A DNA stretch of 64,000 bases from Stegostoma tigrinum (lineage: Eukaryota), in the NCBI RefSeq assembly GCF_030684315.1, contig NC_081396.1, forward strand, positions 4,092,001 through 4,156,000, given 5' to 3'. A program made the position numbers and the translations under genes. The notes beneath the pieces were generated by a model that was given only the letters and a program-made list of their open reading frames with translations, was not told the DNA's origin and did no database searches. The number at the start of each line of letters is the position of its first letter. Position 1 is the first letter of the stretch. Below, in pieces: positions 1,461 to 60,226 of the stretch.

Positions 1461-2594
1461 CATTGTTTTGCAATGTTAATCGATTTCCAATGAGTATTTC
1501 TGATTCTGATGGTGTCGGGAACATTTTGCTCCGTTACGGGGAGATAAGCACTTTGTGGTTGACGCTTGATGCAACGCAGAATTTCTGACTCCGAGGTAAA
1601 GGCCCGAGATAAGACCTCCACGACGCCAGAAATGTATAACAATATTTCTGAGTATTTTGGATATAAAATATGTCCAAGGCACGTGAAGGAAAATGACATC
1701 CGGTGTTTGTATACCAGAACTGATTCCACGGAGTCCAGGATTTTGAGTCACAAAAGTGGAAAATAAGCTGGAATAATGCCAGTTTGGTTTTGGATTATGC
1801 AGAACAAAAGTTAGATGATTAACGGAACAAGCTTGTCCAACATGCTTCAAAAAGCAGTATGTGGCATGGAAAATTTAAAGCATTGGTCAGTGAGGAAGAA
1901 GCTGACTGTTCCTGGTAGCTATGAAATCACATTACAGTGTGCACACAATGTTAAGACTCGGAAAGGGGAGTAAGCATATCCTCCGTTAATCCTCAAACTC
2001 TCTTCTTCCTCTGCTCAAAATAAGAAAATTTATTCCTGTTATCTTTGGTGTGAAAGTGAAGATACATTCTGTCAACTGATGCACTGCTGCGAGTTCCCTG
2101 GCAGTCCCCAGATCAAAAAGGATTAATTCAAGTCATGAAAACTATATGATCAGTGCCCAAAGCAATGCTTTCTTGTTTGTGTGTTGCGATCAAAAAACAT
2201 TTTAAATGCCTCAACAGTTTATTTTCTCATTACGTGCAATGGGGCAATTTAAATCTGGCATGCAGTTTATGGACGTAGCCCCATTGAGGAATCAGGAAAA
2301 CAAAATCATAATTCGTGGTGTTCATTTGTGATGAAATGGACATTGCCAAATTTCATCACATTGCGATTTAAGTTGGAGAAGACACTTGGCAGAATCCTAC
2401 AATGAGTGAGCTTCAGTCTGTCACTGAAGCAGGACCGGGCTGGCCGGCCTAAGGGAGTGTTAACTGCCCAGATAAAAGCCCTGGACCTGCTAATAATCGA
2501 ATTTAACTAGATGTGTGGAAAATTATGAAAAGTAGGAAACACAATCAAATAAAATGGTTGTCTATTTGCAAAACAATTGGAGGAAAGAAAACAC

Positions 2595-2609
2595 TTTATT
2601 ACTTTTATT
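2595..2609 (-). terminator. Two tandem AATAAA polyadenylation signals for the secretory mRNA
   Basis: Minus strand TCAATAAAAGTAATAAAG about 30-40 nt after the vestigial TGA. Confidence 0.8.
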
Positions 2610-2636
2610 GAATTCTTAAGTGTAACCTTGAGATTT

Positions 2637-3027
2637 TCATGGCGTGAATTTATGGTGTCCATCAGTGCATGTGAAATATTCACAAAACTCGGTTTGCCGC
2701 TGGATTTATCAACCGTTCTGTTGATGATCTTCAATGGAATCGCTTCATGTCCCACCACACAGGAGTAAGAAGCACCGCTGGTCCACTCCTCCGCAGCAAT
2801 GGATAATAGGCTGTACAAGAAGAAGGAGGTGTTATTGCTCGCTGCCATCACCTCAGTGTTCTTATAGTTTGTGGGATTAACCGGCTTGTCATTGGTTGTC
2901 CACTTGACAAAGATCTCACGGGGTCTGAAACCCCTCACGAAACAGGTGAGCAAAACAAACTTCTGTGCGGAAACTTCTTCTGTTGTTGGCAGGAGAACGG
3001 ACACCATTGGCTCCAGTGGATTTACCG
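2637..3027 (-). pseudogene. IGHM: IgM CH4 exon plus secretory tailpiece (decayed)
   Basis: ttctgcag|CG GTA AAT CCA; [28 protein letters not shown]...[57 protein letters not shown]. The end reads TCA CGC CA TGA where S-C-Q-stop is expected. Confidence 0.96.
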
Positions 3028-3489: not shown

Positions 3490-3795
3490 ATTTCTCCTAG
3501 TGGATAGAATGTCGCAGTAGAGTCCGTAGATACTGATTGCTCACCACGCATACAAATTTATCCCCACTCAGCCAGGCTTCAGTAGAAATATCTAACTCGC
3601 TGATCACACCTTCGGAATGCTCTCCAGAATGGTCAACAATCTCTGATTTCAGAGTCTTCTTATCGTGCATCCAGGTGAAGTTGGCATCAAAATGAAGTTT
3701 GTACACAACGCAGGTTAATTTCACCGCCGGCTCCAGTAAGACCTGTTCAACTGGTGGCGGTAATATTTTAGCGGTGTAATCATGGAACTCTGAAA
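3490..3795 (-). pseudogene. IGHM: IgM CH3 exon with premature TAG near its 3' end
   Basis: ccattgtag|TT TCA GAG ... ATC CAC TAG GAG AAA T|gtgagt; KILPPPVEQVLLEPAVKLTCVV..FTWMH..LDISTEAWLSGDKFVCVVS; stop at 3499-3497. Confidence 0.95.
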
Positions 3796-5721: not shown

Positions 5722-6036
5722 CCTGAGGTCCTGTGATGTTCTGACTTTGAATGAACCCCTCATGACCGACTTGGCATGTATGAACTGCTCTGTCGAACCA
5801 TTTACAATAAGGGACTCTCATCTGACTGGTCGTTGAGAAGTTTCCATTCGCTTCACACACAGGGGCAGTGAAGATACCAGAATCCACGTGTCTTCCATTC
5901 TTCAACCAAATCACGGAGATTTTCTTTGGATCGAGATCAAAGATTGAACAGACAATGGTTGCAACTTTTCTGCTCTCGATTACTTCTCTGGAACGCACAG
6001 TTAAGAGAACAGTCGGAGGGACACCACCGTTTTGAA
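5722..6036 (-). pseudogene. IGHM: IgM CH2 exon
   Basis: ttttcttaag|TT CAA AAC ... CCT CAG G|gtaaga; PPTVLLTV...ATIVCSIFDLDPKKISVIWLKNG...NGNFSTTSQMRVP..WF..VHTCQVGH; 315 bp, open. Confidence 0.95.
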
Positions 6037-9446: not shown

Positions 9447-9743
9447 ATAACATTTCAGTGCTTGTGTCAAACCCGCTGTGTCGAACCTCACAGATAACTT
9501 TTCCATATTTTGCCTCTGATTCGGGGACCACTAACTGACTGCTCAGGGTGTAAGTTCCCTTCTGGTTTCTCATCGATGGGTATGTCATAAATCCAGTCGA
9601 GATTGGCTTCCCACCTTTCTTCCAGGTCACAGGGGTAGCGTCAGGGGAATAGTCCATCGCCAAACAACCAAAAGTCACAGAACCGTTAGAGTTGTGCTGG
9701 TCACTGGAGGCGAGACGATAAATCATCAGGGAAGACGGCTTTA
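9447..9743 (-). pseudogene. IGHM: IgM CH1 exon
   Basis: ttcccag|TA AAG CCG ... ATG TTA T|gtaagt; KPSSLMIYRLASSDQHNSNGSVTFGCLAMDYSPDATPVTWKKGG...TYTLSSQL...ICEVRHSG; 297 bp, open. Confidence 0.95.
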
Positions 9744-10340: not shown

Positions 10341-10493
10341 NNNNNNNNNNNNNNNNNNNNNNNNNNNNNNNNNNNNNNNNNNNNNNNNNNNNNNNNNNNN
10401 NNNNNNNNNNNNNNNNNNNNNNNNNNNNNNNNNNNNNNNNNNNNNNNNNNNNNNNNNNNNNNNNNNNNNNNNNNNNNNNNNNNNNNNNNNNNN
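10341..10493. other. Assembly gap (N run) in the J-C intron
   Basis: Read directly from the sequence. Confidence 1.
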
Positions 10494-15916: not shown

Positions 15917-17095
15917 ATAATAAAATGTGAGGCTGGATGAACACAGCAGGCCGAGCAGCATCTCAGGAGCACAAAAGCTGACGTTTCGGGCCTAGACCCT
16001 TCATCAGAGAGGGGGATGGGGTGAGGGTTCTGGAATAAATAGGGAGGGGGGGAATCAGACTGAAGATGGAGAGAAAAGAAGATAGGTGGAGAGAGTTTAG
16101 GTGGGGAGGTAGGGAGGGGATAGGTCAGTCCAGGGAAGACGGGCAGGTCAAGGAGGTGGGATGAGGTTAGTAGGTAGATGGGGGTGCGGCTTGGGTTGGG
16201 AGGAAGGGATGGGTGAGAGGACGAACAGGTTAGGGAGGCTGAGACAGTTTGGACTGGTTTTGGGATGCAGTGGGTGGAGGGGAAGAGCTGGACTGGTTGT
16301 GTGGTGCAGTGGGGTAGGGGATGAACTGGGCTGGTTTAGGGATGCGGTGGGGGAAGGGGAGATTTTGAAGCTGGTGAAGTCCACATTGATACCATTAGGC
16401 TGCAGGGTTCCCAAGCAGAATGTGAGTTGCTGTTCCTGCAACCTTCGGGTGGCATCATTGTGGCACGGCAGGAGGCCCATGGTGGAAATGTCATCCAAAG
16501 AATGGGAGGGGGAGTGGAAATGGTTAGCGACTGGGAGGTGCAGTTGTTTGTTGTGAACCGAGCGGAGGTGTTCTGCAAAGCAGTCCCCAAGCCTCCGCTT
16601 GGTTTCCCCAATGTCGAGGGAGCCACACTGGGTACAGTGGATACAGTATACCACATTGGCAGATGTGCAGGTGAACCTCTACTTAATGTGGAATGTCATC
16701 TTGGGACCTGGGATAGGGGTCAGGGAGGAGGTGCTGGGCAAGTGTAGCATTTCCTGTGGTTGCAGGGGAAGGTGTCGGGTGTGGTGGGGTTGGAGGGCAG
16801 TGTGGAGCGAACAAGGGAGTCATGGAGAGAGTGGTCTCTCCGGGAAGCAGACAGGGGTGGGGATGGAAAAATGTCTTGGGTGGTGGGGTCGGTTTGTAGA
16901 TGGCGGAAGTGTCTGAGGATGATGCGTTGTATCTGGAGGTTGTGGGGTGGTGTGTGAGAACGAGGGGGATCCTCTTTGGGCGATTGTGGCAGGGGCGGGG
17001 TGTGAGGGATGTGTTGCGGGAAATACGGGAGACGCGGTCAAGGGCGTTCTCGATCACGGTGGGGGTAAAGCTGCGGTCCTTGAAGAACTTGGACA
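15917..17095 (-). mobile_element. Penelope-like element, 5'-truncated left arm (GIY-YIG endonuclease + 3' pLTR)
   Basis: VYCIHCTQCGSLDIGETKRRLGDCFAEH...LPVANHF...EQQL...LGTLQPNGIN motifs; reverse complement of ~17460-18602. Confidence 0.92.
15978..16009 (-). ncRNA. Minimal hammerhead-ribozyme motif in Penelope pLTR
   Basis: CT-CTGATGA-A-GGGT-CTAG-GCCC-GAAA-CGTC-AG: CUGAUGA and GAAA cores, stem II, palindromic ACGT stem III, GUC cleavage triplet. Stem I is only ~2 bp. Confidence 0.75.
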
Positions 17096-18612
17096 GGCCC
17101 CAACACAGGCCCCAAACCCCACCTCTTCCTCCGGTACATTGATGACTGTATCGGCGCCGCCTCTTGCTCCCTAGAGGAGCTCAAACAGTTCATCCACTTC
17201 ACCAACACCTTCCACCCAAACCTTCAGTTCACCTGGGCCATCTCCAGCACATCTCTCACCTTCCTGGACCTCTCAGTCTCCATCCCAGGCAACCAGCTTG
17301 TATTTGATGTCCATTGCAAGCCCACCGACTCCCACAGCTCCATAGAATACACCTCCTCCCACCCACCCTCCTGCAAAAATTCCATCCCCTATTCCCAATT
17401 CCTCCGCCTCCGCCGCATCTGCTCCCATGATAAGACATTCCATTCCCGCACATCCCAGATGTCCAAGTACTTCAAGGACCGCAACTTGACCGTGTCTCCC
17501 GTATTTCCCGCAACACATCCCTCACACCCCGCCCCCGCCACAACCGCCCAAAGAGGATTCCCCTCGTTCTCACACACCACCCCACCAACCTCCGGATACA
17601 ACGCATCATCCTCCGACACTTCCGCCATCTACAATTCGACCCCACCACCCAAGACATTTTCCATTCCCACCCCTGTCAGCTTTCCGGAGAGACCACTCTC
17701 TTGTTCGCTCCACAATGCCCTCCAACACCACCACACCCGGCAGCTTCCCCTGCAACCGCAGGAAATGCTACACTTGCCCCCACACCTCCTCTCTCACCCC
17801 TATCCCAGGTCCCAAGATGACATTCCACATTAAGCAGAGGTTCACCTGCACATCTGCCAATGTGGTATACTACATCCACTGTACCCGGTGTGGCTCCCTC
17901 TACATTGGGGAAACCAAGCGGAGGCTTGGGGACTGCTTTGCAGAACACCTCTGCTCAGTTCGCAACAAACAACTGCACCTCCCAGTCGCCAACCATTTCC
18001 ACTCCCCCTCCCATTCTTTAGATGACATGTCCATCATGGGCCTCCTGCAGTGCCATAATGATGCCACCCGAAGGTTGCAGGAACAGCAACTCATATTCCG
18101 CTTGGGAACCCTGCAGCCTAATGGTATCAATGTGGTCTGCACCAGCTTCAAAATCTCCACTTCCCCCACCGCATCCCTAAACCAGACCAGTTCGTCCCCT
18201 CACCCCACTGCACCACACAACCAGCCCAGCTCCCAACCTCCACCCACTGCATCCCAAAATCAGTCCAACCTATCTCAGCCTCCCTAACCTGTTCTTCCTC
18301 TCACCCATCCCTTCCTCCCAACCCAAGCCGCACCCCCATCTACCTACTAACCTCATCCCACCTCCTTGACCTGTCCATCTTCCCTGGACTGACCTATCCC
18401 CTCCCTACCTCCCCACCTAAACTCTCTTCACGTATCTTCTTTTCTCTCCATCTTCGGTCCGACTTCCCCTCTCTCCCTATTTATTTCAGAACCCTCACCC
18501 CATCCCCCTCTCTGATGAAGGGTCTAGGCCCGAAACGTCAGCTTTTGTGCTCCTGAGATGCTGCTCGGCCTGCTGTGCTCATCCAGCCTCACATTTTATT
18601 ATCTTGGATTCT
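17096..18612 (+). mobile_element. Penelope-like element, 5'-truncated right arm (RT C-terminus + GIY-YIG + 3' pLTR)
   Basis: From 17105: TGPKPHLFLRYIDDCIG...FHPNLQFTW...LTFLDL...YTSSHP..CKNSIPYSQFLRLRRICS. ORF 17715-18287 has VVYYIHCTRCGSLYIGET. Confidence 0.93.
18510..18541 (+). ncRNA. Minimal hammerhead-ribozyme motif in Penelope pLTR
   Basis: ctCTGATGAagggtctaggcccGAAAcGTCag, identical over 32 nt to the minus-strand copy at 15978-16009. Confidence 0.75.
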
Positions 18613-21720: not shown

Positions 21721-22132
21721 GGCAATGATACTTTAACATATTTTGTCAATGTGTTTTAAACTCTTTTACGTACTTAACGTTTGTTGTCGATATTAAAAAA
21801 TGCAGATATTGAGTGTCACTGGCATTAATCATTGTTTAAACGTCATACTGTTCACAAGACTTCCCCCCCCCCCAGACCACCAATTAAACAGAGCCAAACA
21901 GTATTGCCATCTGACACAGAAAGAGAGAAGCGTCGAATAACTGAATCTCTCACCAACTCTTTACTTATTTGCTGACACGTAAATGCATCTTATAAATACT
22001 TTGCAGAAAAAAAACAATTTTAAGCAAACTAAGCTCAGCACAGAATCCGAGTTTCATTTGAGTCATGAAATACTCGAATAAATAGACAATTAAAACAAAT
22101 ATAACGGTTACTAATAACATTCAAGTTCTTAC

Positions 22133-22185
22133 CTAAGGCCACAGTCACCCTGCTTCCTTGTCCCCAGTAATCGAATTCAGTATAT
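22133..22185 (-). other. IGHJ: Fused D2-JH segment
   Basis: ATATACTG AA TTC GAT TAC TGG GGA CAA GGA AGC AGG GTG ACT GTG GCC TTA G|gtaag = YTEFDYWGQGSRVTVAL, with the WGxG motif and an intact donor. Preceded by a 12-RSS rather than the 22/23-RSS of an unjoined shark JH. Confidence 0.9.
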
Positions 22186-22213
22186 CACTGTGAGATGCAT
22201 GATATCAAATATA
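22186..22213 (+). promoter_or_regulatory. Recombination signal sequence, 12-bp spacer (5' RSS of D2)
   Basis: Reading away from the coding end: CACTGTG - agatgcatgata (12 nt) - TCAAATATA. It abuts the D2-J segment and faces the 22-RSS. Confidence 0.8.
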
Positions 22214-22527
22214 GTCGTGGACTGTATATTGTGAAATGCAGATACTTATTTGCATTGATCCCCAAAAAGAAAAGAACTGATCCAGGCTCTTCTAATAATG
22301 ACACAGTGCAAAAGTTTAGCTTTCATTTCAAATTGTATATTTAACGGTGCTTGGAATATGATCTAATGTTTAGTGTGCTTTTCATATGTCAATCTACACT
22401 ACGAAAATAAAAGAATTTTACACATGTCCACAACCGAGCTTTACTGGACAGCATTTTCAGTAAGTCTTACATTATTTGTTGCTCCTGTATAGCTCTCATC
22501 GCCAATTTGAACGAAACACTTGTCAAT

Positions 22528-22565
22528 GGTTTCTGAATGACGATGTAGGTATGCACATCAATGTG
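22528..22565 (-). promoter_or_regulatory. Recombination signal sequence, 22-bp spacer
   Basis: CACATTG - atgtgcatacctacatcgtcat (22 nt) - TCAGAAACC (consensus CACAGTG/ACAAAAACC). Confidence 0.88.
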
Positions 22566-22575
22566 ACTCACGTAT
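22566..22575 (-). other. D1 remnant joined directly to VH (ATACGTGAGT)
   Basis: 10 extra nt between the V end (TGT GCA AAA GAC) and the first heptamer. There is no RSS flush with the V end; the following RSS has the 22-bp spacer expected 3' of shark D1. Confidence 0.75.
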
Positions 22576-22880
22576 GTCTTTTGCACAGAAATAGATGGCG
22601 GTGTCTTCGATCTTCAAGTTTTCAATTTCCAATGCAAAGATATTGTTTGAAGTGTCTTTGGATGCAGTAAATCGATCTTTATTCGCTGGCACACAGTAAT
22701 TGCTCGAGGAATCATAATTGGTAACTCACCACTCCAGACCCTGTCCGGGAACTTGGCGGACCCAAGCCATCCATGTTTCGCCAAGATTTAACCCGCTGGT
22801 TTTACAGGTCAGTTTCAGGGAACCTCCAGGTTGGCTGTTTCCTGTCTCTGGTGGAATAAAAGTAACCTCTGACTGGACAC
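22576..22880 (-). pseudogene. IGHV: VH exon with in-frame stop in FR2
   Basis: Acceptor ctttttgaag|GT; [100 protein letters not shown]. Both canonical Cys, the WVRQ motif and DTAIYFC are present. Confidence 0.96.
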
Positions 22881-23007
22881 CTTCAAAAAGGAAATAAAAT
22901 ATCACTAGTTTTGCAAATGAAATGGTTCCTGAATCATTTACATCCCAGTGGGAGACGAACACTTAAATGATTACAAACAGAAACTTGGAGGAAAAAAGAA
23001 AACTCAT

Positions 23008-23056
23008 TGGATAAGAAAATAAGAAACAAACTGAGAAAAATCGTCGACGTTGTCAA
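23008..23056 (-). pseudogene. IgH leader exon (start codon TTG, donor ATGAGT)
   Basis: TTG ACA ACG TCG ACG ATT TTT CTC AGT TTG TTT CTT ATT TTC TTA TCC A| = (M>L)TTSTIFLSLFLIFLS, a hydrophobic leader 127 bp upstream of the V acceptor. No ATG, and the donor reads ATGAGT instead of GTGAGT. Confidence 0.88.
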
Positions 23057-23059
23057 TCT

Positions 23060-23230
23060 GGTAGCTTAGGAGAAAATGCTCTGTGAAGAGCTTTCTAAAC
23101 AAACCCCAAATCGTGGAATTATGGTCCAGTGACCAGAATTTATCAGTCCATCAGATGGGGCAGGTTTACAGGTTCCGCCTTTTGGTTTCCAGCTGGATGC
23201 TGTGATTCGTTCACTGTACCACCTCCCACA
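23060..23230 (-). promoter_or_regulatory. Putative VH promoter: TATA-like GATAAAT (23144-23138), E-boxes (23152-23157, 23190-23195), no octamer
   Basis: Lies immediately 5' of the leader; motifs read directly from the sequence, function not demonstrated. Confidence 0.4.
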
Positions 23231-24768
23231 GCCCTCAAAGATGGTTTAATATATTTATATGAGGTTATTATTAAACGTGGAATGTTTCCGTCTTGGGATA
23301 TTTGTTTTGCCATACATCTTGATTGGACGTATTCCCATATTTTTTAGCAGTGGAAGTACGATTAAACAGCTTCAGGTCTGTTTCAGATGACAGTATTTAG
23401 TATTTAATTTGAGACAGTAAATATTTCAAATGGAAACTAAATCCCTTTATTTCTTGAAATTCATTAGCAAGCAGCTAAATCTGTGAGCATAATTAAATGT
23501 ATTATCAGCCAATAAAATTGCTGACACTTTTTGGAGACACTCCAAGTCTCTGTCACACAACAGAATAGGTCACATTTCATAACAGGCGTTTCTAAATTCA
23601 AGTTTGGAAACTTATTACGGACCATGCACAAAATTATCATGCTTAGAATATCTTGTCCGTGACGATACAGTTTGAGTCGAGAGATGCGAAGAAGCTCCTT
23701 TTCTTGAAGAATATCTCCCATTTAATCTCCTTCAAATTTGTCCGGCCAAACATTATCATTTGGAAATGCATAGCCAAGGAAAATTACGCAACTGATAAAT
23801 ACACAGTGAGTTTACAGTCAAACATAACAATCAGAAAGACGTTTGAAAGATAATCTTATGACTCAAAACAGACCAGTTGATAAATTAAGAACAAATCGCC
23901 ACAGCATACAAATAACTGCCAGCAACCGTGTGTACATCAAAAGTAGCGAGTCAGTTCGAGAGTAAACAATCATCAAAACTGATGCAGATCATAAACAGGT
24001 CATTTCTGAACTCATCGGTAGCTTCGACGGGTTCTGTTACAGACGTTGGCAAAAATTAAGTGTTACATTACACCAGTGCTAGTCAATGAAAAGCGCCCAC
24101 TCAATGTAAATGATCAGAGATTGTTACAAAAAGATATACCGGATCGAACCAACCAAGATTCCAAAATGTACTTTGAATTGATAACGAATGTCACTGCAAT
24201 GCGAGATTTGATCCATTGGGTTCACATTCTAGAGATTTAAAATAGTTAATGAATAACTTAACTGCCTCGAATGATCTTTGTTTGGAAGTAATAAAAAAAT
24301 CTGGCATACAGTACATTTCCAGTTTTCTCATGGACACCCAGTGAATGCTGTATTCAATGACTTTTTTCAAAGAAGACATGCCAAGGGACATGAGTTTTTT
24401 GTGTAAATGACAAATTATAGCGTGTATCGTGATGTTTTATCTTCGGTGATTCATATGGCTTTAATTTGCCAGGCACAATATCTGCAGAAAAAACAAACAT
24501 GGAATTCAAAGTGCCATTTAATAGAAGCATCTGCTGGTTCTACTGTAAACCAGAGATTTTTTTCGTCACTGCTTACTGCTTGGCGGAAAACCAGTTTCAA
24601 AACATACCACACACCTCTGCATAAACACATATACCCAGCAAAAATACGGGCTAAAAGTTCAGTTTTCAACTGTGTCACTTTCTCGTGACTGGAAATATTT
24701 GTGCATTCCCGACACTATAGAAAGATGCAAAATTAAGTGGAGGATCGCTTCAGGACATTATGATTTTA

Positions 24769-24983
24769 NNNNNNNNNNNNNNNNNNNNNNNNNNNNNNNN
24801 NNNNNNNNNNNNNNNNNNNNNNNNNNNNNNNNNNNNNNNNNNNNNNNNNNNNNNNNNNNNNNNNNNNNNNNNNNNNNNNNNNNNNNNNNNNNNNNNNNNN
24901 NNNNNNNNNNNNNNNNNNNNNNNNNNNNNNNNNNNNNNNNNNNNNNNNNNNNNNNNNNNNNNNNNNNNNNNNNNNNNNNNNNN
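24769..24983. other. Assembly gap (N run)
   Basis: Read directly from the sequence. Confidence 1.
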
Positions 24984-28911: not shown

Positions 28912-29057
28912 NNNNNNNNNNNNNNNNNNNNNNNNNNNNNNNNNNNNNNNNNNNNNNNNNNNNNNNNNNNNNNNNNNNNNNNNNNNNNNNNNNNNNNNNN
29001 NNNNNNNNNNNNNNNNNNNNNNNNNNNNNNNNNNNNNNNNNNNNNNNNNNNNNNNNN
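28912..29057. other. Assembly gap (N run)
   Basis: Read directly from the sequence. Confidence 1.
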
Positions 29058-53420: not shown

Positions 53421-53789
53421 CCGTAGTTTTATACAATCCCTCCCTCGAACTCAAATCTTCCATGAAATCATTTCTGCACTCTCTCCAGTTTGATAATATC
53501 CTTCCTATAGTCGGGCATCCAGAACTGGAGACAGTCCGGCAGAAGAACCCTCACCAACCTCCCACAGAAACTCAATATGAATTCGCAACTCCGACATTCA
53601 GCAGTCTGAGAATTATAGTCACACATGCTTAATGCCTTCTTACCCACTCCAACAACATGTGAAACAAACTTCAAAGAACTGGTCTCTCTGTACTAAAATA
53701 GAACATAGAACATAGAACAGTACAGCACAGAACAGGCCCTTCAGCCCACAATGTTGTGCCGACCATTGATCCACATGCATGCACCCTGA

Positions 53790-56560
53790 AATTTCTGTGA
53801 CCATATGCATGTCCAGCAGTCCCTTAAATGACGCCAATGACCTTGCTTCCACAACTGCTGCTGGCAACGTATTCCATGCTCTCACAACTCTCTGTGTAAA
53901 GAACCCGCCTCTGACATCCCCTCTATACTTTCCTCCAACCAGCTTAAAACTATGACCCCTCGTGTTAGCCATTTCTGCCCTGGGAAATAGTCTCTGTCTA
54001 TCAACTCTATCTCTACCTCTCATTATCTTGTATACCTCAATTAGGTCCCCTCTCCTCCTCCTTTTCTCCAATGAAAAAAATCCGAGCTCAGTCAACCTCT
54101 CTTCATTAGATAAGCCCTCCAGTCCAGGCAGCATCCTGGTAAACCTCCTCTGAACCCTCTCCAAAGCATCCACATCTTTCCTACAAGAGGGCGACCAGAA
54201 CTGGACGCAGTATTCCAAGTGTGGTCGAACCAAAGTTTTATAGAGCTGCAACAAGATCTCACGACTCAAACTCAATCCCCCTGTTAATGATAGCCAAAAC
54301 ACCATACGCTTTCTTAACAACCCTGTCCACTTGGGTGGCGATTTTAAGGAATCTATAATATCTGCACACCAAGATCCCTCTGTTCCTGCACACTGCCAAG
54401 AATCATATCCTTAATCCTGTACTCAGCTTTCAAATTCGACTTTCCAAAATGCATCACCTCGCATTTATCCAGGTTGAACTCCATCTGCCACCTCTCAGCC
54501 CTTCTCTGCATCCTGTCAATGTCCTGCTGCAGCCTACAACAGCCCTCTATACTATCAACGACACCTCCAACCTTTGTGTCGTCTGCAAACTTGCTGACCC
54601 ATCCTTCAATCCCTTCATCCAAGTCATTAATAAAAATTACAAACAGTAGAGGCCCAAGGACAGAGGCCTGTGGAACACCACTCACCACTGACTTCCAGGC
54701 AGAATATTTTCCTTCTACTACCACACGCTGCCTTCTGCTGGCTGGCCAATTCTGTATCCAGACAGCTAAGTTCCCCCGTATCCCATTCCTCGTGACCTTT
54801 TGAATGAGCCTACCATGGGGAACCTTATCAAATGCCTTACTGATGCCCATATACACCACATCCTCAACTCGACCCTCATCAACTTTTCTAGTCACATCCT
54901 CAAAGAACTCGAAAAGGTTTGAGAGGCATGACCTGCCCCTCACAAAGCCGTGTTGACTGCATTTGATCAAGCCATGCTCTTCCAGATGGTCATAAATCCT
55001 ATCACTCAGAATCCTTTCTAACACCTTGCAGACGACAGACGTGAGACCTACTGGTCTGTAGTTGCTGGGGATTTCCCTATTTCCTTTCTTGAAGAGAGGA
55101 ATTACATTTGCCTCTCTCCAGTCCTCAGGTATGACTCCAATGGAGAGCGAGGATGCAAAGATCCTCGCAAGTGGCGAAGCAATTGCATTTCTCGCTTCCC
55201 AAAGCAGCCGAGGACAAATCTCGTCCGGGCCTGGCCACTTGTCAATCTTAATGTTTGACAAAATTTTCAGCACTTCAGCTTCCTCTATCTCTATCCATTC
55301 CAGCATGCACACCTGCTCTTCAAAGGTTTCATTCACTACAACGTTCGGTTCTTTCGTAAAGACAGAAGCAAAAATCTCATTTAGGGCTTCCCCTACCTCC
55401 TCAGACTCCACACACAAGTTCCCTATGCTATCCCTGATCGGCCCTAATCTTTCTTTGACCATTCTCTTATTCCTCACATAAGTGTAAAATGCGTTTGTGT
55501 TCTCCCTAATCCGTTCTGCCAAGCCTTTCTCGTGCCCGCTCCTGGCTCTGCTCAGACCATTTTTGAGCTCCTTCCTTGCCTGCGTGTAATCCTCTCCAGC
55601 TGAACTTGACCCTAGCTTCCTCCACCTTATGTACGCTACCTTCTTCCTTTTCACAAGAAGCTACGCCGCTCTCGTCATCCAAGGTTCCTTTATCTTACCC
55701 CTTCTTGCCTTTGTCAGAGGGACATATTTACTCATCACTCGCAACAACTGTTCCTTAAACAGCCTCCACATGTCTATAGTGCCCTTACCATGGTACAATT
55801 GCTCCCAGCCCATGCTTCCTAACTCATGTCTAATCGCGTCATAGTTTCCTCTTCCCCAATTAAATATCCTCCCATTTTGCCTAATCCTCTCCTTCTCCAT
55901 AGCTATGTAGAATGTGAGGCAGTTATGGTCACTATCACCAAAATGCTCTCCCACCACAAGATCTGATACCTGTCCCGGCTCGTTTCCGAGCACCAAGTCT
56001 AGAATGGCCTCTCCCCTCGTCGGCCTTCAACGTACTGAGTTACAAAACCCTCCTGAACACACCTTACAAAAACAGCTCCATTCTCATCTTCTGCTCGAAG
56101 GAGGTTACAATCAATATGAGGAAAGTTAAAGTCACCCATTAAAACAACCCTAATACGTCCACACTTTTCCAAAATCTGTCGACCTATGCTTTCTTCAATC
56201 TCCCCGCTGCTATTGCGGGGCCTGCAGTAAACCCCTAACGAGGTGACTACTCCCTTGCTGTTCCTAATTTCCACCCATACTGACCCAGTAGGCAGATCTT
56301 CCTCGACAATGGAAGCTTCTGTAGCTGTGATACCATATGATTAATAGTGCTACACGCCCTCCTCTTCCCCCCCGCCCCCCGCCAATTCTCTTATAAATGT
56401 CCTAAACCCTGGAACATCCAGCAACCATTCCTGCCCATGAGAAACCCATGTCTCTGTTATGGCCACAATATCATAGCACCAGGTACTGATCCATGCTCTC
56501 AGTTCATCATTTTTATTCCTGATACTCCTTGCGTTAAAGCAAACACACTTTAACCGATCC
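53790..56560 (-). pseudogene. CR1 ORF2 (endonuclease + reverse transcriptase), a few stops and frameshifts
   Basis: Collinear ORF pieces 56350-56793, 55999-56274, 55661-55996, 54353-55654 and 53640-54320. Confidence 0.92.
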
Positions 56561-56689
56561 CTTGGTTCCTTCCCAGGAAAATCCTTCCCACTAGCTGGTC
56601 TACCTCTTGCTACTGCCTCACCTGCATCAACTCTCACCACCGGTATACAGCTCAGGTTCCCCCCTCCCTGCCACACTTGTTTAAACCCG

Positions 56690-57613
56690 CTCCAACTACT
56701 CGAGAAAACCTTCCACCCAGGACATTTGACCCCTTCCAGTTCAGATGCAACCCATCCTTGTACAGGTCCCATCTTCCCCAGAAGGCATCCCAATAATCTA
56801 CATATCCGAAGCCCTCCCTCCTACATCAGCTGCATAGCCACGTGTTAAGCTGCGCCCGCTCCCTGTTCCTCGCCTCACTATCTCGTGGCACCCGAATTAA
56901 ACTGGAGAACACTACTCTGTTCGTCCTGCTTTGCAGCTTCCATCCTAACTCCTTGTAATCACTTTTTATATCCTCAATCCTATTTCTGGCTACATCATTA
57001 GTGCCAATATGTAACACGATTTCTGGCTGTTTGCCCTCCCCTTTTAGAACCTTAGACACCCGATCAGAGACGTCCCAGACCCTGGCACCAGGGAGGCAAC
57101 ATACCTTCCGGGAATCCCGATCCTGACCACAAAATCTCCTGTCGATTCCCCTAACTATCGAGTCCCCTAACACGAGTACTTTTCTATTCTGCCCCCTTCC
57201 CTTCTTTGCCTCAGTGTCAGGTTCTGTGCCAGAGAACGGACTACTGTGGCTTTCCTCCGGTAGGTCATCCCCCCCAGCAGTGTCCAAAACGGTATACTTA
57301 TTGCTGAGGGGAATGCCCACAGGGGATCTCTGCACTGTCCGTCTGTCCCCTTTCCTCCCCCTAACTGTAACACATCTATCCTTGTCCTGAGCCTTAGGAG
57401 TGACCAACTCCCGGTAACTCCTCTCAATTACCCCCTCTGCCTCCGGAATGATCCGTACTTCAACCAGCTCCAGCTCCATTTCCCTAACACGGTTTTCAAG
57501 GAGCTGTAATTGGGTGCACTTCCCCAGATGTAGCCAGCGGAGACGTGTGCCATGTCTCCCAACTGCCACATTCTGCAGGAGAAGCAATCAACTGCCCTAG
57601 CATCCATACCCAA
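56690..57613 (-). pseudogene. CR1 ORF1 (Cys-rich/coiled-coil N-terminus + SGNH esterase), disrupted
   Basis: CFSCRMW..GKCTQLQLLENRVREMELEL; VLGDSIVRG, CCLPGARV, LHIGTND. One frameshift and a premature stop at 56826. Confidence 0.88.
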
Positions 57614-58277: not shown

Positions 58278-60226
58278 GACCTCGCATTAAAAAAATGCAC
58301 AGTACAGCATAGTAAATCCCCTTCGGCCCATGATGTTGTGGTGACCTATTAAGCCACTAAGATCAATCTACTGTACATATCCTACATTTTACTCTCCTGT
58401 ATGGATCTATCCATGAGTTACTCAAAAGTTTCCAAAGTTCCTGACTCCACTACCACTGCCAGAGGAATATTCAACATGCCCAACACTCGCCGTGTGAAGA
58501 AAATACCTCTGGTGTCTTCCCTAGCTTCTGTCAATCGCCTTAAAATTATGCCACCTTATCATAGTTATTTCTTCACTGACGAAATAAAATGTCCCTGAGT
58601 ATCCACTCCATCTCTGCATCCCATCATCCTGTACACCCCTGTCAAGTCACCTCTCATCCTTCTTTGCTAAAATGAAAAAAGCCGTATTTCTTTCAACTTT
58701 TCATCATAGGATCTGTCCTCCAGTCCTCGGAGCATCCTGTTAAAACTTCTCAGTACCGTCTGTCAAGATTCCACATCTTTCCTGTCTGGTGTTGACCAGA
58801 ACTGAATACAATATTGCAAGTGTGGTCCAAACAGAGTTTCATAGATCTGCAGCATAACTTAATGTTTCTTAAACTCAAGACCCACTACCAATGAGAGCCA
58901 ACATGTCACATGCCTTCTTTACAGCCGTGTCGACTCTATAGCAACTTTGAAGGATCCATGGAAGTGAACCCAAGATCCCTCTGTTCCACCACACAGCTGA
59001 AAATCCTGTCATTATGCCTGCATTCTGCATTTAAATTTTACTTTCCAAAAATAATCAGTTCACATTTTACTGGGTTGAATGCCATCTACCACTTCTTTAT
59101 CCAACTTTGCATTCTGCCAATGTCCTGTTGCAATCTATGACTGCCGTCCATGCTGTCCACAACTCCACCAAACTTCGTGTCATCGGCAAACTTATAAACC
59201 CACCCTTCAATTTCCTCCTCAAAGTCATTTGTAAAGATCATAAAGAGCAGATCTCCCAGAACAGATCGCATGGGAGATCCACTAGTCACAAAGGTCCAGG
59301 CTGAATAATTTCCATGTACATTATCACCTGTCTTCGATTCAGAAGCCAGTTTGGTATCCATACAGCCAAATACCCCTGAATCCCCTGTCTCCTTGCTTTC
59401 TGAATGAGCCTACCATATTGAATATTGACAAATGCCCTGCTAAAATCCATATGCAACACATCTATTGCTCTAACACCATCTATGTGTTTTTTCACAACCA
59501 CAAAGAATTCACTAAGGTTTGTGAGGCATGTTGTGCCCCTCACAAATCCATGGTGACCATTTGTAGTCAAACTGTGATTTTCCAAATAGTCATAAATACT
59601 GTCTCTCAGACTATTCTCCAATAAATTGTCTACCAAAGAAGGAAGGCTTACTGGTCTGTCATTTCCAGGGTTATCTCTATTCCCTTTCTTGAGGCAAGGA
59701 ATGACATTTGCTATCCTCGAGTCCTCTCGTACTACTCCAGTGGGCGGGTAGGATGCGAAGATCATTGTCAAAAGGGCAGAACTCGCTTCCCTCTCTTGCT
59801 GTTATAACTTTGGTTATATCTCTTCTGACCCAGGAGACTTACCTGGCCTGATGTTTTTTGCTTCAAAAATGCTAGCACATCCCGTTGCCTCACATCAAAC
59901 TATTCGAGCAGAAATGCTGTCCTCACCAACGTCAAGGGTCCGTTCAGTTGTGAATACTGAAGCAAAGTACTCATTAAGACCCCCCCACCCCGCTACCTCC
60001 TGGAACTGCATGCACAAGTTCCCTTCATGATTCCTGAATGCCCCTATCCTCACTCTGGCGATCTTCTTGTTACTCATACCAAAAGAAGCCTTGTTGTTTT
60101 CATTGATTCTACTGGTGAATGTTTTCTTGTGCATGCTTGAAGCTCTCATGGGTGCACTCTTCAATTCCATCCTGGCTACCTTGTAGACTTCAAGAGCACT
60201 CTCCGACCCTTGCTTCCTAAACTTTA
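58278..60226 (-). mobile_element. 5'-truncated, older CR1 LINE (RT to 3' end)
   Basis: NDRPVSL, HHGFVRG, DFSRAF, YKFADDTKFGG in ORF fragments 59086-59771. Confidence 0.9.

What the first reader, a model, noticed from the sequence alone, without database searches (positions are those of the whole stretch)
22133..22880. Germline pre-joined VD-DJ antibody gene with a single RAG join left to make
Seen: V runs directly into 10 extra nt and then a 22-RSS. After one 380-bp interval (22186-22565) a facing 12-RSS abuts ATATACTG fused to a 5'-trimmed JH. Established: an unrearranged shark IgM cluster is V-23 / 12-D1-22 / 12-D2-12 / 22-J with three intervals of a few hundred bp, and partly joined VD-DJ clusters are known from horn shark. 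Inference: two RAG joins (V-D1, D2-J) happened in germ cells and were inherited. The remaining pair obeys the 12/23 rule in deletional orientation, and both heptamers keep CAC. A flush join (GAG T|A TAT ACT) is out of frame, needing +1 or -2 nt, and would give a short, mostly hard-wired CDR3 (CAKDIRE-x-YTEFDYW).
Basis: partly seen in the sequence, partly recalled or inferred. Interest (0 to 1): 0.85.

Follow-up and report, generated by a model that had tools for sequence, protein, structure and literature searches.

The report
Dead, half-assembled shark IgM gene
This is a real shark IgM heavy-chain gene cluster in which two of the three antibody-gene joins (V to D1, D2 to J) are already present in inherited DNA; that layout has been known in sharks and skates since 1988, and this copy is a broken pseudogene that cannot make an antibody.

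Summary
On the minus strand lie a leader, a VH exon (22880-22576), 10 extra nt, a 22-spacer RSS, an interval, a facing 12-spacer RSS, 8 nt of D, a trimmed JH ending at the splice donor (22133), and four Cmu exons 12-20 kb downstream.

Contigs of paralogous clusters from the same species support a VD1-D2J layout:
- V homology stops at 22576, and the paralogues' own, unlike V-RSS abuts that point.
- The 10 nt plus 22-RSS match a paralogue's D1 3' end and its RSS.
- ATATACTG, the 12-RSS and about 300 nt of interval match a paralogue that continues as D sequence, not J.

The layout sits in exact contigs at single-copy depth in two DNA-like samples. The VD1-RSS junction recurs exactly in a run of a second study. 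This argues against a somatic or misassembled origin.

The gene is dead:
- No usable leader donor is in phase with the V exon.
- There is an in-frame TGA in V, seen in three runs.
- A TAG replaces a conserved Lys in Cmu3.
- The secretory tail has lost its Cys and its stop.

It is a new member of a known kind and a pseudogene, so interest is modest. First-stage notes report other germline-joined IgM clusters in this genome; I did not test them.

The parts
22975..23007 (-). Leader exon remnant. ATG at 23007; the first plausible donor, GTAATC, follows base 22975. It is defective.
   Evidence: donors after the ATG give phase 0 or 2, or lie behind an in-frame TAA. The only phase-1 GT gives a 4-nt exon. 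The V exon needs phase 1. Expressed paralogues end their leader ...CTGACTTTCTTATCCT before the V exon (loose end at 22880).
22576..22880 (-). VH exon, the V-derived part (FR1 to Cys-Ala-Lys-Asp)
   Evidence: Pfam V-set on both halves. 62% identity to shark VH proteins. Homology to paralogue DNA and to rearranged transcripts never extends past 22576 (loose ends and joints).
22726..22728 (-). In-frame TGA stop at the FR2/CDR2 border (LEW*), where shark VH relatives read LEWL
   Evidence: Covered with 0 differences by exact contigs in X1, X4 and X5 (table 8).
22566..22575 (-). D1 remnant ATACGTGAGT, its 3' end flush with its own RSS
   Evidence: loose end at 22545: a paralogue reads ...TACAGTGGGT|CACAGTG|ATGTGAACAATGT and then runs in register into our spacer and nonamer. 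16 of 18 positions are identical across spacer end, heptamer and D start (compared by eye).
22528..22565 (-). D1 3' RSS: heptamer CACATTG, 22-nt spacer, nonamer TCAGAAACC
   Evidence: Homologous to the paralogue RSS that follows a D-like coding end. Unlike the paralogues' V-RSS, which reads CACAGAG TGAGGAACAGCGG....
22214..22527 (-). D1-D2 intersegment DNA
   Evidence: records 4 and 11: a 1290-nt paralogue contig is colinear with 22178-22488 at about 82% identity. Other contigs align 22499-22545 next to the D1-type RSS.
22186..22213 (-). D2 5' RSS: heptamer CACTGTG (read away from the coding end), 12-nt spacer, weak nonamer TCAAATATA
   Evidence: Paralogue contigs cover it with only two one-base indels, one inside the nonamer and one just past it (table 4: 22211, 22214).
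22178..22185 (-). D2 remnant ATATACTG. Its 5' end is intact against its RSS and its 3' end is trimmed.
   Evidence: three or four paralogue contigs match down to 22178 and then diverge from J, continuing GG(G/T)TA. The core TACTGGGGTA recurs in CDR3 letters of rearranged transcripts (table 5c).
22133..22177 (-). 5'-trimmed JH (FDYWGQGSRVTVAL, donor G|GTAAGA). The first 1-2 nt, AA at 22177-22176, are of undetermined origin (N/P or J).
   Evidence: J homology of rearranged paralogue transcripts reaches at most 22176 (joints). Transcript loose ends at 22133 and 22140 run on into a Cmu1-like start.
9447..9743 (-). Cmu1 exon
   Evidence: C1-set, E 5.5e-14. Splice sites and phase 1 at both ends.
5722..6036 (-). 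Cmu2 exon
   Evidence: C1-set, E 1.6e-12..
3490..3795 (-). Cmu3 exon with a premature TAG at 3499-3497 (SIH*EK; relatives read SIHKEK or SIHKET). Also Phe where 3 of 4 relatives have Cys near its start.
2507..3027 (-). Cmu4 exon. The secretory tail is damaged: ...[11 protein letters not shown]... runs on 45 codons, where relatives end ...MDTVNSCQ-stop.
   Evidence: 81-91% identity to shark IgM Cmu4. Alignment A1..

Best explanation
This is a germline, partly assembled (VD1-D2J) IgM heavy-chain minilocus of an elasmobranch, and it has since decayed into a pseudogene.

Proposed history:
- An ordinary V-23 / 12-D1-22 / 12-D2-12 / 23-J cluster underwent two RAG-type coding joins in the germ line: V to D1, and D2 to J.
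- Each join removed a pair of RSS and the DNA between them, and trimmed a few coding nucleotides.
- What remained was one intersegment stretch bounded by the D1 3' 22-RSS and the D2 5' 12-RSS.
- The joined cluster was inherited.
- It now carries lesions in the leader, V, Cmu3 and the secretory tail, so it cannot produce a heavy chain whatever happens at the last join.

In a run that behaves like RNA it is still transcribed at a low level in unrearranged form. On paper its RSS pair is still a legal RAG substrate.

Shown here: the anatomy, the homology of each junction to paralogues, the single-copy depth, and the lesions.

Inferred: that RAG made the joins, that they happened in germ cells, and the order of joining and decay.
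For: Identity as an IgM cluster:
- V-set and four C1-set exons.
- Cmu4 is 81-91% identical to shark IgM, including the GKPSFVNIS...MDT tail.
- JH has WGQG and a splice donor.

VD1 join:
- Paralogue V contigs match up to 22576, and their own heptamer and an unlike spacer abut that point.
- V ends of six rearranged transcripts never pass 22576.
- The following 10 nt, heptamer and spacer align to a paralogue reading TACAGTGGGT|CACAGTG|ATGTG..., which runs into our nonamer.

D2J join:
- Paralogue contigs are colinear with 22178-22488 (ATATACTG, 12-RSS and interval) and diverge from J exactly at 22178.
- J homology of transcripts starts at 22176 at the earliest.

Germline status:
- A 1628-nt contig in X1 (depth 18.1) and a 1202-nt contig in X4 (depth 8.5) span 21800/21851-23051 with 0 mismatches.
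- These depths equal those of flanking single-copy contigs (19.7 and 7.6).
- No near-identical unjoined allele was seen.
- X5, from a second study, holds an exact 281-nt contig across V, D1, the RSS and the interval (22486-22766).

Size: one interval of 380 bp, and about 810 bp from leader intron to J. These match the roughly 380-400 bp lost per join and the 809-832 bp two-join products in nurse shark (PMC2435157).

Pseudogene status.
Against: - No full paralogue sequence could be read. The D1 and D2 assignments rest on 30-letter loose-end consensi, some of low agreement (0.6-0.71), and on alignment end points.
- Tissue and individual for the runs are not known. X1-X4 may be the very sample that was assembled, so only the VD1 junction has support from a second study.
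- The D2 3' RSS of the paralogues (12-spacer) is read from a consensus with 0.68 agreement.
- The C-exon lesions were not checked against reads.
- RAG involvement is inferred from the anatomy only.
Confidence: 0.85

Rival explanations
1. The layout is V-DDJ or V-DJ. V keeps its own 23-type RSS, the 10 extra nt are V-encoded, and the 12-RSS is that of D1, with D1 (and D2) already fused to J.
For: The spacer classes (22 on the V side, 12 on the J side) fit this as well as they fit VD1-D2J. V-DDJ is a common somatic configuration in some nurse shark gene groups.
Against::
- Paralogue V homology and all transcript V ends stop at 22576.
- The paralogues' V-RSS reads CACAGAG TGAGGAAC..., which is unlike the RSS here.
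- The RSS here aligns with one that follows a D-like coding end (TACAGTGGGT).
- Relatives end V at CAR/CVRE.
Confidence: 0.04
2. The layout is a somatic rearrangement intermediate or an assembly artefact. VD-DJ is a normal two-join intermediate in shark B cells and thymocytes, and one such molecule was assembled.
For: Somatic VD-DJ molecules exist in nurse shark lymphoid DNA (PMC2435157). The tissue of the DNA runs is unknown.
Against: - The exact contigs have the same depth as flanking single-copy DNA in two samples.
- No unjoined near-identical allele contig was seen.
- The same VD1-RSS junction appears in a run of another study.
- The junction-flanking heptamer and D1 carry substitutions relative to paralogues, as in old germline DNA.
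- The multiple lesions across 20 kb suggest a cluster long free of selection; this bears on its age, not on the junctions.
Confidence: 0.03
3. The deletions were not made by RAG. They arose by replication slippage, or by unequal exchange or gene conversion between clusters, and only mimic coding joints.
For: No mechanism can be shown from sequence alone. A VD-D-J and a V-D-DJ cluster could also have recombined with each other.
Against: Both deletions begin and end at coding/RSS borders. Each removes exactly one legal 12/23 pair of RSS and leaves trimmed coding ends. That is the signature of V(D)J coding joints, and it occurs twice in one cluster.
Confidence: 0.05
4. It is a functional one-join gene. 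The stops are individual-specific alleles or errors, and the cluster makes a restricted-CDR3 heavy chain after D1-D2 joining.
For: - Both heptamers keep CAC, the spacing is legal and the orientation is deletional.
- The locus is transcribed in X5.
- Germline-joined genes can have early-life roles, as IgM1gj does.
Against: - There are four independent lesions in the leader, V, Cmu3 and the tail.
- The V TGA is identical in three runs from two studies.
- No transcript joint with this locus's own D1 and D2 letters was seen (table 5c).
- No consensus octamer lies within 700 bp upstream.
Confidence: 0.03

Closest known systems
Germline VD1-D2J (VD-DJ) IgM clusters of horned shark and little skate (Kokubu et al. 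1988, as summarised in PMC2193153 and PMC5192425)
   Same: - The same minilocus type.
- The same two joins already made in inherited DNA.
- One remaining intersegment bounded by D1 3' and D2 5' RSS.
[quoted passage not shown]
   Different: - The species is different (not identified here; Cmu4 is 81% identical to bamboo shark).
- Here each junction could be mapped against paralogues to the nucleotide, and the cluster is shown to be a multiply hit pseudogene.
- I could not read the 1988 paper itself, which is not held.
Somatic VD-DJ two-join intermediates in nurse shark B cells and thymocytes (PMC2435157)
   Same: - Identical topology.
- Similar sizes: about 380-400 bp lost per join, and about 810-830 bp from leader intron to J.
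- Such molecules are transcribed unrearranged.
   Different: The nurse shark molecules are clonal somatic molecules at minute frequency. This one is at single-copy genomic depth and recurs identically in another study's run.
Fully germline-joined shark Ig genes (nurse shark IgM1gj VDJ; NS4 and NS3 VJ light chains; PMC2193156, PMC4279169)
   Same: The presumed origin is the same: RAG activity in germ cells followed by stable inheritance.
   Different: Those genes are completely joined. Several are in frame, expressed in pups and functional. This one keeps one join undone and is dead.
Chicken pseudo-VH (germline-fused VD) gene-conversion donors
   Same: A VD fusion in the germ line that cannot be expressed on its own (discussed in PMC2193156).
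   Different: The chicken pseudogenes lack an RSS, leader and C exons, and serve as conversion donors. No evidence of donor use exists here.

Membership tests
Elasmobranch IgM heavy-chain minilocus (L-V-D1-D2-J-Cmu1-4) | VH exon of the V-set type with a leader intron | tested here: met
   Pfam V-set on both halves. 62% identity to shark VH. AG acceptor at 22881-22882, followed by GVQS.
Elasmobranch IgM heavy-chain minilocus (L-V-D1-D2-J-Cmu1-4) | JH with a W-G-x-G motif and a splice donor, followed in cis by four C1-set mu exons and a secretory tail | tested here: met
   Cmu4 is 81-91% identical to shark IgM sequences.
Elasmobranch IgM heavy-chain minilocus (L-V-D1-D2-J-Cmu1-4) | Open reading frame through leader, V and C exons (a functional member) | tested here: not met
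   - The leader is out of phase.
- TGA in V.
- TAG in Cmu3.
- The tail has lost its Cys and stop.
Germline-joined VD1-D2J cluster | The V coding end is fused to D1-derived nucleotides, and the V 23-RSS and D1 5' 12-RSS are absent | tested here: met
   V homology ends at 22576. The next 10 nt align to a paralogue's D1 3' end. The paralogues' V-RSS is absent here.
Germline-joined VD1-D2J cluster | The retained V-side RSS is the D1 3' RSS (22/23 spacer) | tested here: met
   22-nt spacer. It aligns to a paralogue RSS that lies behind a D-like coding end (loose end at 22545).
Germline-joined VD1-D2J cluster | The D2 5' 12-RSS is retained, and D2 is fused to a trimmed J with loss of the D2 3' RSS and the J RSS | tested here: met
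   paralogues are colinear with 22178-22488 and then diverge from J. The paralogues' own D2 3' RSS is read only from a low-agreement consensus.
Germline-joined VD1-D2J cluster | Present in germline or non-lymphoid DNA and inherited | tested here: inconclusive
   Single-copy depth in two samples and an exact VD1 junction in a second study argue strongly for germline. Tissue and individuals of the coded runs are unknown.
RAG-competent 12/23 RSS pair | Heptamers with CAC, 12 and 23 (plus or minus 1) spacers, A-rich nonamers, facing orientation | tested here: met
   CACATTG-22-TCAGAAACC (6/7 heptamer, 7/9 nonamer) and CACTGTG-12-TCAAATATA (6/7, 5/9). The 12-RSS nonamer is weak, and paralogues carry a C within it that is absent here (table 4).
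RAG-competent 12/23 RSS pair | Actual cleavage and joining in lymphocytes | not testable with these tools
   No joint carrying this locus's own D1 and D2 letters was seen in the two RNA-like runs (table 5c). That is weak negative evidence.

The most novel reading that the evidence does not exclude
The dead VD1-D2J cluster is still an active RAG and transcription target in lymphocytes. Its unrearranged V-D1-RSS stretch and its J-C intron are found in an RNA-like run, and the RSS pair is legal. It would then be a natural single-join reporter of recombinase access that is free of selection on the product. It might also act as a decoy or a gene-conversion donor for neighbouring clusters.
Probability: 0.1. 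Interest if true: 0.45.

Novelty: new member of a known kind. Interest (0 to 1): 0.3.

Why it matters
Germline-joined antibody genes in cartilaginous fish are the classic evidence that the RAG recombinase has acted in germ cells and reshaped antigen-receptor loci. This copy adds a cleanly mapped example. Both germline joins can be placed to the nucleotide against unjoined paralogues, which early horned shark work found hard to do (PMC2193156).

It also shows that such a cluster can persist as a transcribed pseudogene.

It does not change the picture. The VD1-D2J type has been known since 1988, and this copy cannot contribute to the antibody repertoire. Its practical value is for annotation: it should be labelled an IGHM pseudogene cluster, partly rearranged. 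It may also serve as a selection-free marker for dating germline joins across species.

Tried and rejected
I could not fetch DNA of unjoined shark clusters, so the paralogue comparison rests on the read laying tables alone.
- The V-exon protein search gave only 3 hits, too few for a V-family assignment.
- The 1988 horned shark paper (PMC454840) is not held. PMC2191167 and PMC2192082 are held only as short scans without the relevant text.
- A simple RSS consensus scan is not discriminating on its own: 20 hits against about 6 in shuffles.
- No octamer (ATGCAAAT or ATTTGCAT, at least 7 of 8) was found within 700 bp upstream of the leader.
- No TM exons were recognised in the 2.5 kb left downstream of Cmu4.
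- The species could not be named: run and organism names are coded, and the best protein hits are unnamed.
At the read cap they would give well under 1x depth, and converted reads would fall below the likeness floor.
Exons were searched and translated one by one, and the stop-containing V and Cmu3 were searched as separate pieces.
- Rejected readings are V-DDJ, somatic or misassembled origin, non-RAG deletion and a functional one-join gene (see the rival explanations).

Full report
WHAT IS THERE

The finding lies on the minus strand. Reading 5' to 3' on that strand, the order is:
- ATG at 23007 and a short leader.
- A leader intron ending in AG.
- A VH exon from 22880.
- The conserved ...[10 protein letters not shown], whose last V-homologous base is 22576.
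- Ten further nucleotides, ATACGTGAGT (22575-22566).
- Heptamer CACATTG (22565-22559), a 22-nt spacer and nonamer TCAGAAACC (22536-22528).
- About 310 bp of non-coding DNA.
- A nonamer, 12-nt spacer and heptamer at 22213-22186, which read CACTGTG-12-TCAAATATA when taken away from the coding end.
- ATATACTG (22185-22178), then AA, then TTCGATTACTGGGGACAAGGAAGCAGGGTGACTGTGGCCTTAG, followed by the donor GTAAGA. The last J base is 22133.

IT IS AN IgM CLUSTER

Downstream on the same strand lie four C1-set exons with phase-1 splice sites:
- Cmu1 at 9743-9447.
- Cmu2 at 6036-5722.
- Cmu3 at 3795-3490.
- Cmu4 from 3027.

The last exon ends in the mu secretory tail motif [12 protein letters not shown]. 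It is 81-91% identical to shark IgM sequences: 81% to Chiloscyllium punctatum and 88-91% to two unnamed EukProt proteins. The V halves hit Pfam V-set and are 62% identical to shark VH.

The J-Cmu1 intron is about 12.4 kb. It holds a retroelement insertion at roughly 15.9-18.6 kb that another first-stage note describes. No second Ig cluster is in the window.

WHICH RSS ARE THEY? THE PARALOGUE TEST

Instead I laid the contigs of four runs of the same species on 21800-23300 at 80% likeness. This brought in contigs of paralogous IgM clusters and of rearranged transcripts, and their alignment end points answer the question.

(a) The V end.
- Genomic paralogue contigs match V up to 22576.
- Their own sequence abuts that point. 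Read on the coding strand it is CACAGAG TGAGGAACAGCGGTTGGATTTTT: a heptamer directly behind V and a spacer unlike ours.
- The V ends of six rearranged transcript contigs lie at 22576, 22581, 22583 or 22584, never beyond 22576.
- So V ends at 22576, and the ten extra nucleotides are not V-encoded.

(b) The 22-RSS and the ten extra nucleotides.
- Other paralogue contigs align to 22499-22545, which covers the interval, the nonamer and part of the spacer.
- They then read, on the coding strand, ...TACAGTGGGT | CACAGTG | ATGTGAACAATGT, running into our spacer.
- Compared by eye in register with 22546-22575, 16 of 18 positions around the heptamer are identical.
- After a one-base gap the D letters also match: ours is ATAC-GTGAGT and the paralogue is TACAGTGGGT.
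- Hence the 22-RSS is the RSS that follows a D-like element, which is D1. Our ten nucleotides are the 3' part of D1, still flush with its own heptamer, as expected for an end RAG has not cut.

(c) The 12-RSS and ATATACTG.
- A 1290-nt contig and shorter ones (records 4, 5, 11, 12) are colinear with 22178-22488 at about 82% identity. This covers ATATACTG, the 12-RSS and 300 nt of interval.
- They stop matching exactly at 22178. They go on for more than 200 nt with sequence that is not J and begins GG(G/T)TA.
- In the X1 consensus a CAC heptamer and a 12-nt spacer follow. Agreement there is only 0.68, so this reading is tentative.
- CDR3 letters of rearranged transcripts contain TACTGGGGTA-like cores and ACAGTGGGTA cores (table 5c). 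These fit a D2 that begins ATATACTGGGGTA and a D1 that ends CAGTGGGT.
- So ATATACTG is the intact 5' end of D2 against its own 12-RSS, joined to a 5'-trimmed J. Transcript J homology begins at 22172-22176. The origin of the AA at 22177-22176 is open.

(d) The same 1290-nt contig also has a 97-nt piece on the V end (joint 22488 to 22576). It has 372 nt beyond D2 and about 515 nt unaccounted for between the interval and V. That is what an unjoined V-D1-D2-J cluster with intervals of roughly 400 bp would give. This last point is inference from coordinates.

Sizes agree with the nurse shark, where each join removes about 380-400 bp and two-join products from leader intron to J are 809-832 bp (PMC2435157). 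Here the same span is about 810 bp.

GERMLINE OR SOMATIC?

VD-DJ is also a normal somatic intermediate in shark lymphocytes (PMC2435157), so this had to be checked.

- In X1 a 1628-nt contig (depth 18.1) covers 21800-23051 with no mismatch. In X4 a 1202-nt contig (depth 8.5) covers 21851-23051 with no mismatch and one gap.
- Adjacent single-copy contigs have depths 19.7 and 7.6. Single paralogue contigs have depths of about 20 and about 9 (table 8).
- A somatic junction in a polyclonal tissue could not reach that depth.
- No near-identical unjoined allele appeared.
- X1 and X4 are two samples of one study and may include the assembled animal, so they are not independent of the assembly.
- X5 belongs to a second study. 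It holds an exact 281-nt contig across V, D1, the RSS and 42 nt of interval (22486-22766), and an exact 152-nt contig in the J-C intron (21883-22034).
- X5 and X9 behave as RNA. They show leader-V splice joints, V-N-D-N-J joints with unrelated letters between, loose ends at the J donor that run on into a Cmu1-like start, and depths in the thousands on exons only.
- So the unrearranged locus appears to be transcribed at a low level in X5 but not X9. DNA carry-over cannot be excluded.
- The D2J junction has no support outside study P1.

THE GENE IS DEAD

(1) The leader.
- Following the only ATG, donors give phase 0 or phase 2, or lie behind an in-frame TAA. GTAATC after 33 nt gives phase 0.
- The single phase-1 GT leaves a 4-nt exon.
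- The V exon needs phase 1 (G|GT GTC CAG TCA).
- Expressed paralogues end their leader ...CTGACTTTCTTATCCT, like the LLTFLSG/C of shark relatives. Our leader differs by indels.

(2) The V exon.
- It has an in-frame TGA at 22728-22726 (QGLEW*V), where relatives have LEWL.
- All three exact contigs in X1, X4 and X5 carry it.

(3) Cmu3.
- It reads ...LRHSIH TAG GAG AAA T|GTGAGT.
- Four relatives read SIHKEK, SIHKKK or SIHKET there. A conserved Lys codon has become a stop at 3499-3497.
- A Cys present in three of the four relatives near the start of the exon is Phe here.

(4) The secretory tail.
- It reads ...[13 protein letters not shown]... for 45 more codons.
- Five of the seven relatives that reach this point end ...MDTVNS/ACQ-stop, and a sixth reads SCQ and then runs on. 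The penultimate Cys and the stop are lost.

(5) The promoter. No consensus octamer lies within 700 bp upstream.

The C-exon lesions were not checked against reads.

MECHANISM

The most likely history is two RAG-type coding joins in germ cells: V(23) with D1 5'(12), and D2 3'(12) with J(23).
- Each deletion starts and ends at coding/heptamer borders.
- Each removes one legal RSS pair.
- Each leaves trimmed coding ends.
- The two uncut coding ends are flush with their heptamers.

This is the explanation given for such clusters since 1988 (PMC2193153) and argued for shark light chains (PMC2193156).

The order of the two joins, and whether decay came before or after them, cannot be told here.

The remaining pair is CACATTG-22-TCAGAAACC and CACTGTG-12-TCAAATATA. 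It is legal and deletional. The 12-RSS nonamer matches only 5 of 9, and paralogues carry a C within it that is absent here (table 4). RSS-like motifs are common by a loose scan, so competence is untested. No transcript joint carrying this locus's own D letters was seen.

COMPARISON AND NOVELTY

[quoted passage not shown] They are listed as VD-DJ in a review (PMC5192425). [quoted passage not shown]

This is therefore a new member of a known kind, in a species I could not name.

First-stage notes of this scan report other germline-joined IgM clusters in the same genome: a VDJ 1.0 Mb away, a V-DD-J 0.8 Mb away, and a VDJ on another piece. I did not test them.

VERDICT

It is wrong in treating the locus as an antibody gene awaiting one join.
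- Interest is modest.

Noticed in passing
window 22168-22581 (paralogue, locus unknown): In DNA-like run X4, one contig at full single-copy depth (8.55) joins J (22168) to V (22581), skipping 412 bp. This suggests a paralogous, fully germline-joined VDJ cluster elsewhere in this genome. It was not reported in X1.
   Followed up: no
window 15917-18612: A GC-rich retroelement (quasi-palindromic Penelope-like, according to another first-stage note) is inserted in the 12.4-kb J-Cmu1 intron. Mirrored ORFs on both strands are visible in the ORF list.
   Followed up: no
window 21883-22034 and 22486-22766: Exact contigs of the unrearranged pseudogene (the J-C intron, and the V-D1-RSS-interval stretch) are present in RNA-like run X5 but not in X9. 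This looks like a sterile or unspliced transcript of a dead cluster, or DNA carry-over.
   Followed up: partly
window 23008-23700 (minus strand): No octamer (ATGCAAAT or ATTTGCAT, at least 7 of 8) lies within 700 bp upstream of the leader. An ATAAAT motif sits at 23143. The 5' UTRs of expressed paralogues align up to about 23084.
   Followed up: partly
protein P0004: A 232-aa protein filed under Aeromonas veronii is an elasmobranch IgM Cmu3-Cmu4 fragment, 84% identical to this Cmu4. It is probably host contamination in a bacterial assembly.
   Followed up: no
same genome piece, 1.45-1.63 Mb beyond the window's end and 3.0 Mb before its start: First-stage notes place TCR-delta / NAR-TCR V segments and IgH-like V genes among TCR V genes on the same piece as this IgM cluster. 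That is in line with the reported linkage of elasmobranch IgH clusters to the TCR alpha/delta locus (PMC12227049).
   Followed up: no
window 53640-57587 and 59086-60170 (minus strand): There are long ORFs with reverse-transcriptase and endonuclease-like LINE content. One element is nearly intact (ORFs of 433, 253 and 226 aa). A second copy is degraded.
   Followed up: no
window 10341-10493, 24769-24983, 28912-29057: There are three runs of N (gaps or masked stretches). I left them untouched. None touches the V-J region or a C exon.
   Followed up: no
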